63,136 bases of DNA, filler included, from Octopus bimaculoides (GCF_001194135.2; 7 parts of 6 records of this genome joined end to end with filler, not necessarily neighbours in it); one strand, 5' to 3'. Positions 50,885-52,296 are shown, numbered from the whole stretch's first letter. A program made the numbers and translations. The notes: generated by a model from the letters alone, not told the origin.

Positions 50885-51305
50885 AGAGAAGTACGTGAAG
50901 TACCAGAGTACTTTCTATTTGCAAACAGATCACCGCCCACTACTGACAATATATGATTCCAAAACAGAAACCTCAACGCACACAGCAAATAGACTCCAGA
51001 GATGGAGCACTATCCTATTAAATTACGACTACAGAATGGAGTATTTTACCGTAAAAAAAATACTAGGGCATGCGGATGGTTGTCCAGACTGATACCAAAA
51101 CACGGCGAGCCATTTGAAGAGACGGTAATCGCAGCTCTAAAAGTTGAAGGGGAAATTTTAAAAATGTGATATGGAAAGTGGTACGTGAGCTGCTAGTGAC
51201 CCTGGAGGATATAAAGCGGAATGCTGTAGAAGACAAGTTTATAAAGGAAACAAAAATAACACTGTGGTCAACAAAAGAAAATAGGAACGAGTTTTGTGTA
51301 AAAAT
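50885..51305 (+). mobile_element. Gypsy pol fragment (RNase H C-terminus and linker), frameshifted
   Basis: FYLQTDHRPLLTIYDSKTETSTHTANRLQRWSTILLNYDYRMEYF..LGHADG, then RLIPKHGEPFEETVIAALK..VRELLVTLEDIK. Confidence 0.85.
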
Positions 51306-51328
51306 TTGTGGCTGAGAGCGATGCCAAG

Positions 51329-52296
51329 ATGGACTCGACGACCACCCTGCAGACAAGTGGATTAGTTCATTTACCGTCATATCTCGTCAAAAGAACGATG
51401 AAAATAATGATAAACGGGTTCGACCCGGAAATCAAACCGATGTGGCTCCTGCCAGCGGCCTTCGCCAACATAAAAGAAGGGGTGACACTATTGGACTTGA
51501 AAGAAAAAAGTACCCAGAACTGGTGTGGCAGGGGCGTAAGAGCAACAATCCAGGCTACACCAACAGATATTGATAGCATACTGGGGTTCGTCATCCTTCC
51601 GGATGACACAAGAGTAAAGGTCACTGTTCATGGCAGAGTACCAAAGTGCTCCGGGTGTGGGCAAAAAGGACATATAATAAAAACGTGTCTCCAGGACCTA
51701 CAACCTGAAACACAGAGAGAAAGCCAGACGGAAGCCAGTATGCAGCAGCAGAAAATGGAAGAGAAGCAGGAAGAGGTAATGGTGAAGACAGAGAAAGACA
51801 CACCGTCTACGTCAACGACTACGGAGTACTATCCTATTAAATTACGACTACAGAATGAAGAATTTACCGTAAAAAAACTAGGGTATGAGGATGGTTTGTC
51901 CAGACTGATACCAAAACATGGCGAGCCATTCGAAGAGACGGTAATCGCAGCTCTAAAAGCTGAAGGGGAAATAAAAAATGTGATATGGAAAGTGGTACGT
52001 GAGCTGCGGAAGGAGAAGCAGCAGGAGGAGACGATGGAAGGAGAGACAGTCATGACGAAAAAAGTAGCACCGTTGACAACTTCTACAAAGGTAAGTGACG
52101 GTGAATGGCAAGCAGCTGGGAGGAAGAGAAAGAAGAAAATTACTCATTTCCCACCCCACGAACTGCCTTCCACAAATCTAATAAGCCAAAAGTTACAAGA
52201 CTTTACAAACAAGAACACACATAAATATTTAACAGAAACAAACGAAATAAAGAAAATAGTACGTAGTCAAGGGCCCGGGAACAGGGGGTGCACCCG
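51329..52296 (+). CDS. LINE ORF1-like protein (L1/Tx1-type, CCHC zinc knuckle) with an in-frame Gypsy-derived segment; runs into a gap
   Basis: More than 320 open codons; knuckle CSGCGQKGHIIKTC at 51647-51688; WQAAGRKRKKK motif; 51823-52007 duplicates Gypsy sequence 51004-51193. Confidence 0.65.

What the first reader, a model, noticed from the sequence alone, without database searches (positions are those of the whole stretch)
50885..52296. Chimeric open ORF: LINE ORF1 zinc-knuckle protein with an in-frame Gypsy pol segment duplicated from 800 bp upstream
Seen: 51823-52007 is a close copy of 51004-51193, which lies within a frameshifted Gypsy RNase H/linker fragment. Inside the ORF1-like frame it is read first in an alternative frame (EYYPIKLRLQNEE), then after a 1-nt indel in the native pol frame (LGYEDGLSRLIPKHGEPFEETVIAALK..VVREL). 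The upstream copy has frameshifts that the embedded copy lacks, and the >320-codon frame has no stop up to the gap. Inference: a non-LTR element captured LTR-element sequence twice (upstream or 5' UTR, and in ORF1) and kept ORF1 open. It is either a young chimeric family or a host-co-opted fusion.
Basis: partly seen in the sequence, partly recalled or inferred. Interest (0 to 1): 0.7.

Follow-up and report, generated by a model that had tools for sequence, protein, structure and literature searches.

The report
Truncated LINE fragment patched with Gypsy sequence
This is most likely a dead, recently inserted fragment of an octopus LINE retrotransposon gene that picked up a 180-base patch copied from a Gypsy retrotransposon remnant lying just upstream; it is a repair or copying scar, not a new gene or a new mobile family.

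Summary
51823-52007 is a 91.6% copy of 51004-51193, and it sits in frame inside a 331-codon open frame.

The host frame is a LINE ORF1 homologue with RRM-like domains and a CCHC knuckle. A distant Octopus sinensis relative is followed by an endonuclease/RT ORF2. The repeated segment is the RNase H-to-integrase linker of a Gypsy pol.

Five independent ORF1 relatives (73-83% identical over the N-terminal part) lack the segment at exactly these breakpoints. It is therefore an insertion into ORF1, with a 4-nt GGAG microhomology at the left junction.

- The ORF1 is 5'-truncated at 51304/51305, about 125 codons short, with an in-frame TAA at 51299. It directly abuts the Gypsy fragment that holds the source copy.
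- It has only 14 private substitutions (about 1.8%) against 42-69 in relatives. It is young, so an open frame needs no selection.

Best reading: a dead LINE fragment beside a Gypsy remnant, with a local microhomology-mediated templated insertion that is in frame by chance.

The parts
50862..51304 (+). Gypsy (Ty3-type) pol fragment running from the C-terminal end of RNase H through the linker before the integrase zinc finger. The native frame shifts twice, at about 51080 and about 51157, and has no stop in the native frames. No Gypsy homology was detected upstream of about 50860.
   Evidence: tblastn of pol proteins: P0052 aligns from 50862 and P0080 to 51309. DNA alignment to Gypsy copy L001, which continues into integrase. 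Pfam RT_RNaseH scores 23.0 bits, just under the 24.8 cut-off. Nothing was found upstream.
51004..51193 (+). Copy A, the probable donor of the patch. It carries three derived indels relative to A' and L001.
51299..51301 (+). In-frame TAA that closes the long frame upstream. It lies in Gypsy-derived sequence.
51305..51822 (+). LINE ORF1, part a, 5'-truncated. It holds the end of the first RRM-like module, the second RRM-like module, the CCHC knuckle (CSGCGQKGHIIKTC, 51647-51688) and linker unit 1 (51758-51823). The first in-frame ATG is at 51329 and is not conserved in relatives.
   Evidence: Homology of L002, L005, L006 and L009 starts at 51303-51306, while those relatives have a further 373-377 nt of ORF1 upstream. 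HMMER hits. Fold of relative P0006.
51823..52007 (+). Copy A', a Gypsy pol patch inserted in the ORF1 linker. 51823-51826 (GGAG) is microhomology shared by ORF1 and donor. The net gain relative to the reading frame of L004 is 180 nt.
   Evidence: Exact empty sites in L005 (1441/1443), L004, L006, L002 and L009 (2281/2285). Sister relationship of A and A' against L001: 43 shared differences.
52008..52255 (+). LINE ORF1, part b. It holds linker unit 2 (52010-52090), the basic motif GEWQAAGRKRKKK (52100-52138) and the C-terminal tail. Homology to relatives ends at about 52247-52257.
   Evidence: P0068 is 59% identical over aa 251-305
52256..52296 (+). Tail of the open frame with no match to relatives, running into the N gap. 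The natural ORF1 stop seen in relatives is not present here.

Best explanation
A 5'-truncated and therefore non-functional copy of a LINE ORF1 lies directly downstream of a 443-nt fragment of a Gypsy pol gene, on the same strand. The LINE family is of the tandem RRM-like plus CCHC type.

At or soon after the time this junction formed, the ORF1 DNA or cDNA was interrupted in its low-complexity linker, exactly between two ancient tandem units. The interrupted end annealed through a 4-nt microhomology (GGAG) to the Gypsy fragment about 0.8 kb upstream. About 181-185 nt were copied, and synthesis then returned to almost the same ORF1 position, where at most a few nucleotides were replaced. This is a templated insertion of the break-repair or replication template-switch kind.

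The patch is in frame (net +180 nt) and free of stops by chance. Most of it happens to be read in the original pol frame, which is naturally open. The frame is long and open because the copy is young, about 2% from the family consensus, not because it is maintained. No function is proposed.

Shown: the repeat, the empty sites, the truncation, the microhomology and the youth of the copy. Inferred: the donor being copy A itself, the mechanism and the lack of function.
For: - Five independent relatives have exact empty sites with breakpoints at 51825/6 and 52008/9.
- GGAG is shared by the ORF1 side (ACTACGGAG) and the donor (GATGGAGCAC).
- Recipient sequence resumes with at most a few nt replaced and no target-site duplication. 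This is the signature of two ends of one break.
- The donor-like copy is in cis, 631 nt from the insertion point, in the same orientation. A and A' are sisters relative to the only outgroup: 43 shared differences, with 3 and 4 private ones.
- Divergence is consistent across the three parts: A about 1.6%, A' about 2.4%, ORF1 private changes about 1.8%. This fits one time of origin.
- ORF1 is truncated: relatives have 373-377 nt more coding sequence upstream, and there is a TAA at 51299.
- The private changes show no clear signature of purifying selection: 6 synonymous to 8 non-synonymous, codon positions 3/4/7.
- The insertion lies in the linker, which is hypervariable across the family.
Against: - Indels are oddly concentrated. 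There are 4 in the 375 nt of A plus A' and none that shifts the frame in about 800 nt of ORF1 or in the other 250 nt of the Gypsy fragment. Under a uniform rate P is about 0.01. This could mean constraint on the ORF, a different Gypsy copy as donor, or consensus errors in a short-read assembly of a multi-copy repeat.
- The Gypsy fragment ends at about 50860 with no further Gypsy sequence upstream. Both Gypsy pieces are in sense orientation relative to the LINE. Both facts fit an RT-mediated chimeric retrocopy at least as well.
- Copy number in the genome is unknown.
- The 1-nt deletion that brings A' into frame is derived. Either it arose during copying, within a cluster of three changes in 5 nt, or the frame was restored later.
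Confidence: 0.6

Rival explanations
1. One-step chimeric retrocopy. During target-primed reverse transcription the LINE reverse transcriptase switched templates three times between the LINE RNA and Gypsy RNA (LINE 3' part, then Gypsy patch, then LINE, then Gypsy fragment) and then stopped. The whole block 50862-52296+ would then be a single dead insertion, and the upstream Gypsy piece would not be a pre-existing target.
For: - Alternating G-L-G'-L layout with all four pieces in sense orientation.
- The Gypsy fragment is only 443 nt, begins abruptly inside RNase H, and has no stop in its native frames, so the template was an intact and probably expressed element.
- If two different Gypsy transcripts were used, A and A' could differ from birth. 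That would explain an intact ORF1 beside diverged A and A'.
- 5' chimeras of LINE-1 with other RNAs are documented (PMC13174262).
Against: - After the first switch, synthesis returned to the LINE template within a few nucleotides of where it left. This is expected for two ends of a DNA break but not for free switching between RNAs.
- Three switches in one event is unparsimonious.
- Known LINE chimeras carry the foreign RNA at the 5' end, not internally.
Confidence: 0.17
2. One reading: a propagating chimeric LINE lineage, or a host-co-opted fusion. The Gypsy fragment would serve as a new 5' leader or promoter for a shortened ORF1 starting at ATG 51329, and the pol-derived peptide would be a maintained part of the ORF1 linker.
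For: - The 331-codon open frame.
- Frameshifts accumulate in the non-coding upstream copy, while the embedded copy stays in frame and even carries a frame-restoring 1-nt deletion.
- The insertion is in a linker that tolerates great length variation in the family.
- Promoter co-option by 5'-compromised LINE-1 is documented in humans (PMC13174262, section 14).
Against: - The ORF lacks about 125 codons and starts inside an RRM-like module.
- ATG 51329 is not conserved in relatives.
- The copy is about 1.8% from consensus with a 6:8 synonymous to non-synonymous split, so no selection is needed to explain the open frame.
- No protein in 1.84 billion cluster representatives spans an ORF1/pol junction.
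- Junction look-ups found nothing.
- The donor lying 0.8 kb away argues for a local event.
Confidence: 0.07
3. Assembly artefact. The 1625-nt contig is a mosaic built from reads of several Gypsy and LINE copies, and the duplication, or part of the A/A' differences, does not exist on one molecule.
For: - The contig is bounded by N gaps on both sides in a scaffolded assembly in which gaps sit at microsatellites.
- A and A' share exact runs of up to 34 nt, which can tangle a de Bruijn graph.
- The excess of small indels inside the repeated segment looks like consensus error.
- Short-read octopus references are known to mis-handle LINEs (PMC9115989).
Against: - The ORF1/pol junctions share only 4 nt or less. 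No assembler overlap could create them, so they must exist in reads.
- Both ORF1 flanks are in the same frame and collinear with five relatives.
- A and A' differ enough to be told apart.
Confidence: 0.08

Closest known systems
Templated insertions at break or replication-fork junctions (MMBIR/FoSTeS and polymerase-theta end joining), as profiled at rearrangement breakpoints (e.g. PMC3638133, PMC5120786)
   Same: A stretch is copied from a nearby donor in cis. There is short microhomology at a junction, almost no loss of recipient sequence and no target-site duplication.
   Different: At 181-185 nt the patch is at the long end for end-joining-type insertions. Here both donor and recipient are transposon fragments, and the patch happens to preserve a reading frame. 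The mechanism is inferred from sequence only.
Chimeric LINE insertions formed by RT template switching (U6/L1, Alu/L1 and mRNA/L1 chimeras; Law and Burns 2026, PMC13174262)
   Same: A LINE sequence is joined in sense orientation to sequence from another transcribed element. The LINE is 5'-truncated at the junction.
   Different: Known chimeras carry the foreign piece at the 5' end. Here a second piece of the same foreign element lies inside the LINE coding sequence, with the LINE sequence resuming at the same point.
Non-LTR retrotransposon ORF1 proteins with RRM domain(s) and CCHC knuckle (the 'type I' ORF1p class of Khazina and Weichenrieder 2009, recalled from memory)
   Same: Tandem RRM-like folds plus one CCHC knuckle plus a basic, disordered tail. 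A family member in O. sinensis is followed by an endonuclease/RT ORF2.
   Different: The window copy is truncated inside the first RRM-like module and carries a 60-codon pol-derived insert in the linker. Its own ORF2 cannot be seen because of the gap.
Nested transposon insertions (LINE inside LTR element), common in repeat-rich genomes such as octopus
   Same: A LINE fragment abuts a Gypsy pol fragment on the same strand.
   Different: The continuation of the Gypsy element on either side is not visible, so nesting is not demonstrated.

Membership tests
LINE ORF1p (RRM + CCHC type) | Homology to an ORF1 that is followed by an endonuclease/RT ORF2 | tested here: met
   The window ORF aligns with Octopus sinensis XP_036364761.1 (P0002) at E = 2.7e-19 and 33% identity. 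In L007 that ORF1 (9965-11812) is followed by ORFs with Exo_endo_phos (7e-8) and zf-RVT (1.6e-7). This was met for the family, through a distant member only.
LINE ORF1p (RRM + CCHC type) | RRM-like fold(s) | tested here: met
   An AF2 model of relative P0006 built with the family alignment has pLDDT above 90 over about residues 100-280. Its best PDB matches are tandem-RRM proteins: IMP3 RRM12, SFPQ/NONO, Prp24 and nucleolin RBD12, with E from 4e-5 to 5e-4. TM-scores are low because the two domains pack differently.
LINE ORF1p (RRM + CCHC type) | CCHC zinc knuckle | tested here: met
   C-X2-C-X4-H-X4-C at 51647-51688. Pfam zf-CCHC is significant in relatives P0011, P0013 and P0017. The family profile hits retroviral nucleocapsid knuckles in the PDB. 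The window's own knuckle did not reach Pfam reporting.
LINE ORF1p (RRM + CCHC type) | Complete ORF with its own start codon | tested here: not met
   Homology starts at 51305. Relatives L002 and L005 have the putative start (MDD[DN]) 373-377 nt further upstream. There is an in-frame TAA at 51299.
LINE ORF1p (RRM + CCHC type) | ORF2 (APE/RT) downstream in the same element | not testable with these tools
   An N gap begins at 52297 and the piece ends there. Close relatives on short Logan contigs are interrupted by other repeats after ORF1.
Ty3/Gypsy pol | RNase H C-terminus and pre-integrase linker homologous to pol proteins that continue into integrase | tested here: met
   tblastn: P0030, which has Integrase_H2C2 at 3.8e-13, aligns to 50919-51264 at E = 3.6e-26; P0127 aligns at 70% over 50913-51080. 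The DNA relative L001 has an integrase-like ORF downstream. Pfam RT_RNaseH scores 23.0 bits against a 24.8 cut-off.
Mobile chimeric LINE family | Several genomic copies sharing the same ORF1/pol junctions with different flanks | tested here: inconclusive
   No junction-spanning protein among 133 HMMER hits from 1.84 billion representatives. No exact junction match in metagenome contigs. Exact look-ups of junction-spanning ORFs are not on record. No other copy in the 21-kb piece.
Templated insertion (break repair / replication template switch) | Donor nearby in cis, microhomology at a junction, recipient resumes at the same point, no target-site duplication | tested here: met
   The donor-like copy is 631-819 nt upstream in the same orientation. 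GGAG microhomology at the left junction, at most 1 nt at the right. ORF1 resumes with at most a few nt replaced, a net gain of 180 nt against L004. No flanking direct repeat.
Domesticated (host co-opted) transposon gene | Intact ORF with start, orthologues in other species, purifying selection, expression | tested here: not met
   The ORF is truncated. Private substitutions split 6 synonymous to 8 non-synonymous. No near-identical protein in the protein collections.

The most novel reading that the evidence does not exclude
The block is one member of a young, propagating chimeric LINE lineage. A 5'-truncated element would have been rescued by a Gypsy-derived leader, and its ORF1 linker would have fixed a 60-codon peptide taken from Gypsy pol. 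The frame would be held open by selection for retrotransposition or for a host function. The excess of frameshifts in the upstream, non-coding copy and the frame-restoring deletion in the embedded copy would then be the footprint of that selection.
Probability: 0.07. Interest if true: 0.55.

Novelty: new member of a known kind. Interest (0 to 1): 0.2.

Why it matters
If the best reading is right, the finding matters little. It is a tidy, datable example of a microhomology-mediated templated insertion between two transposon fragments in an octopod genome. It also shows that a long open frame in a young transposon fragment is not evidence of selection.

It would matter more if the chimera were multi-copy. 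Exchange of coding sequence between an LTR element and a LINE ORF1, with rescue of a truncated LINE by a foreign leader, would be a rare documented case of modular evolution of LINE ORF1 in an invertebrate.

A practical point: the O. sinensis reference annotates a member of this ORF1 family as an ordinary protein-coding gene.

Tried and rejected
No read-level test of the junctions, copy number or expression was possible.
- The search for homologous proteins gave nothing, either for the whole ORF or for its N-terminal 137 aa (only 5 candidates). Yet the exhaustive HMMER search found 133 relatives, so the word index evidently does not reach these proteins. The third search was not spent.
- P0026's C-terminal 'KKGFGT' looked like a second copy of the Gypsy/ORF1 junction. 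Its contig L001 shows plain Gypsy pol running on into integrase. Rejected.
- An ORF1 start at about 51284 ('GTSFV*KFVAESD' resembling 'GTVEAQFVAESD') was rejected. That stretch aligns better with Gypsy (L001), and all relatives' homology begins at 51303-51306.
- P0091 (CCHC-like N-terminus plus pol tail) looked like an independent ORF1-pol chimera. Its neighbour carries DUF7083, which I recall as a Gypsy gag-type domain (not tested here), so it is more likely an internally deleted Gypsy. Rejected.
- Tandem duplication plus deletion as the origin of A' was rejected. The two linker units flanking A' are only 70% alike and occur adjacent to each other in all relatives, so they are ancient.
- A junction scan of metagenome contigs gave 0 hits. 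This is uninformative for an animal genome.
- Exact look-ups of window ORFs spanning the junctions were not on record.
- Nothing useful came from Rfam on the piece, the PDB sequence search of the O. sinensis endonuclease, or a paper search for the SRA run numbers.

Full report
**What is in the sequence**

The finding lies on a 1625-nt contig (50672-52296) bounded by N gaps at 50558-50671 and from 52297. Within it, 51004-51193 (copy A, 190 nt) and 51823-52007 (copy A', 185 nt) are direct repeats. They are 91.6% identical over 191 columns, with E = 9e-72 in the 21-kb piece and no third copy there.

The + frame starting at 51302 has no stop for 331 codons up to the gap. The other two + frames have 30 and 14 stops, and composition alone would give such a frame with probability about 3e-9. 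A' is free of stops only in that frame. It is read first out of the pol frame (51824-51862) and then, after a 1-nt deletion, in the pol frame (51863-52006).

**What the two sequences are**

An exhaustive HMMER search of the 329-aa frame gave 133 hits in two separate classes.

- The first class matches residues 2-185.
  - It includes Octopus sinensis XP_036364761.1. At that locus (L007) the ORF1 is followed by decayed ORFs with an Exo_endo_phos endonuclease and a zf-RVT domain, which is a non-LTR retrotransposon layout.
  - A model of family member P0006 folds with high confidence into tandem RRM-like domains followed by the CCHC knuckle. Tandem-RRM proteins are its best PDB matches.
- The second class matches residues 184-236 only.
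  - It consists of Gypsy-type pol fragments, some running on into the integrase zinc finger.
  - tblastn places the upstream Gypsy fragment at about 50862-51304, from the end of RNase H to the pre-integrase linker. Nothing Gypsy-like lies upstream of about 50860.

No hit joins the two classes. The one candidate (P0091) is more likely an internally deleted Gypsy.

**The patch is an insertion into ORF1**

I recovered DNA for five independent relatives of the ORF1, all from Logan contigs: L002/L003, L004, L005, L006 and L009-L011. They are 73-83% identical to the window over the N-terminal part. All are collinear with the window on both sides of A' and lack it.

- L005 923-1441 equals window 51306-51826, and L005 1443-1663 equals 52008-52247.
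- L009 1756-2281 equals 51303-51825, and L009 2285-2526 equals 52009-52257.

The ORF1 side reads ACTACGGAG and the donor reads GATGGAGCAC, so GGAG is shared at the left junction. The right junction has at most 1 nt of homology. There is no target-site duplication. Relative to the reading frame of L004 the net gain is 180 nt.

The site lies in the linker that is hypervariable across the family. It sits exactly between two ancient linker units of about 22 and 27 codons (51758-51823 and 52010-52090), which are adjacent in all relatives.

**The ORF1 is truncated**

Homology of every relative begins at 51303-51306. Upstream of that point the window still aligns with Gypsy (L001 and pol proteins, to about 51297-51309). 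In L002 and L005 the likely ORF1 start (MDD[DN]) lies 373-377 nt upstream of the equivalent point.

The window copy therefore lacks about 125 codons and starts inside the first RRM-like module (helix 158 of P0006). The frame is closed by TAA at 51299-51301. The first ATG (51329) is not conserved in relatives.

**The copy is young**

At ORF1 columns where the other sequences agree, the window has 14 private substitutions (about 1.8%). The relatives have 42-69. The window is 77-83% identical to each relative, whereas they are 72-78% identical to each other. The window is therefore close to the family ancestor. Its private changes split 6 synonymous to 8 non-synonymous, with codon positions 3/4/7.

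With L001 as outgroup, A and A' share 43 differences and have 3 and 4 private substitutions. That is about 1.6% and 2.4%, which matches the ORF1 figure. One time of origin for the junction and the patch fits all three numbers. An open frame after about 14 random substitutions is unremarkable.

**Most likely history**

A 5'-truncated LINE copy came to lie next to a Gypsy pol fragment. A break or stalled synthesis in the ORF1 linker was then resolved by annealing at GGAG to the Gypsy fragment 0.8 kb upstream, copying about 181-185 nt, and rejoining at the original point.

Resumption at the same point, microhomology, a donor in cis and the absence of a target-site duplication are the hallmarks of templated insertions described for replication- and repair-based rearrangements (background: PMC3638133, PMC5120786). 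The three A'-specific changes clustered within 5 nt, including the 1-nt deletion that sets the frame, may be errors of that synthesis. This step is inference.

**What does not fit neatly**

- Indels cluster in the duplicated segment: three derived in A, one in A', and none that shifts the frame in the rest of the Gypsy fragment or in ORF1. Under a uniform rate P is about 0.01. This could reflect consensus errors in a short-read assembly of multi-copy repeats. Octopus short-read references are known to handle LINEs poorly (PMC9115989). It could also reflect a donor other than A, or constraint on the ORF.
- The abrupt 5' end of the Gypsy fragment and the uniform sense orientation also fit an RT-mediated multi-switch chimeric retrocopy (compare PMC13174262). 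I rate that second.
Promoter co-option by 5'-compromised LINE-1 is a known precedent (PMC13174262, section 14).

**Limits**

- The protein collections do not contain this locus.
- No searchable DNA collection holds this genome.
- Copy number, long-read support, expression and the sequence beyond either gap are therefore untested.
- The species is inferred to be an octopod from the O. sinensis homologue and from repeats shared with L007.

Noticed in passing
window 50672-50692; also 34771-34810, 38762-38782, 39647-39667, 42782-42813, 44928-44963, 48025-48049: (TA)n microsatellites are scattered through the piece, and several directly abut N gaps (34771, 38782, 39647, 50672). The scaffold gaps therefore seem to sit at microsatellites the assembler could not cross.
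   Followed up: partly
window 51758-51823 and 52010-52090: The ORF1 linker consists of two ancient tandem units, EEKQEEVMVKTEKDTPSTSTTT and KEKQQEETMEGETVMTKKVAPLTTSTK, with about 70% DNA identity. They are adjacent in all relatives, and the Gypsy patch sits exactly between them.
   Followed up: partly
window 51004-51193 versus 51823-52007: The indel-to-substitution ratio between the two copies is unusually high (5 to 8). All frame-breaking indels of the Gypsy fragment fall inside the duplicated 190 nt, several of them in A/T runs. Either this is real mutation tied to the duplication, or it is assembly consensus error.
   Followed up: partly
window 45474-45875 (+): A 133-aa ORF with HTH_23/HTH_28 matches (E = 1.7e-4 and 1.2e-3). 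It looks like the N-terminal DNA-binding part of a Tc1/mariner-type transposase.
   Followed up: partly
window 32914-33423 (-): A 169-aa ORF whose sequence (…HYCSQLWS…LEAIQRSFTK…) resembles the C-terminal region of non-LTR reverse transcriptases. There is no significant Pfam hit, so this is my reading only.
   Followed up: partly
window 40281-40913, 43383-43480, 47488-47571; 41314-41432: Short interspersed repeats are shared at 74-87% identity with the O. sinensis locus L007 and with Logan contig L005. This supports an octopod origin of the window.
   Followed up: partly
L007 10001-16928 (O. sinensis CM016872.1): The RefSeq model XP_036364761.1 ('uncharacterized protein LOC118765946') is a LINE ORF1. 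Its last exon is spliced across the decayed ORF2 of the same element, so a transposon gene is annotated as a host gene.
   Followed up: partly
L002 about 1100-1650: A second, more distant ORF1-like copy (…VIVEDHRLKCCVCGERGHMKV…) lies upstream of the main ORF1 relative on the same contig, so these elements are clustered or nested.
   Followed up: no
L005 about 1665-1718; L006 about 1530-1604: The 3' ends of two ORF1 relatives appear to be interrupted by other short repeats. By recall these look like octopus SINE-like sequences (GGCGAGCTGGCAGAA… and …GTCGATATAATCGACCCCAGTAC…); this was not tested here. It would explain why relatives diverge after about window 52255.
   Followed up: no
L008 3263-4390: A Gypsy copy in which a CCHC-like N-terminus (likely the gag knuckle) is joined to the RNase H tail of pol, downstream of a DUF7083 ORF; this looks like an internal deletion. 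It superficially mimics the 'CCHC + pol' layout of the finding.
   Followed up: partly
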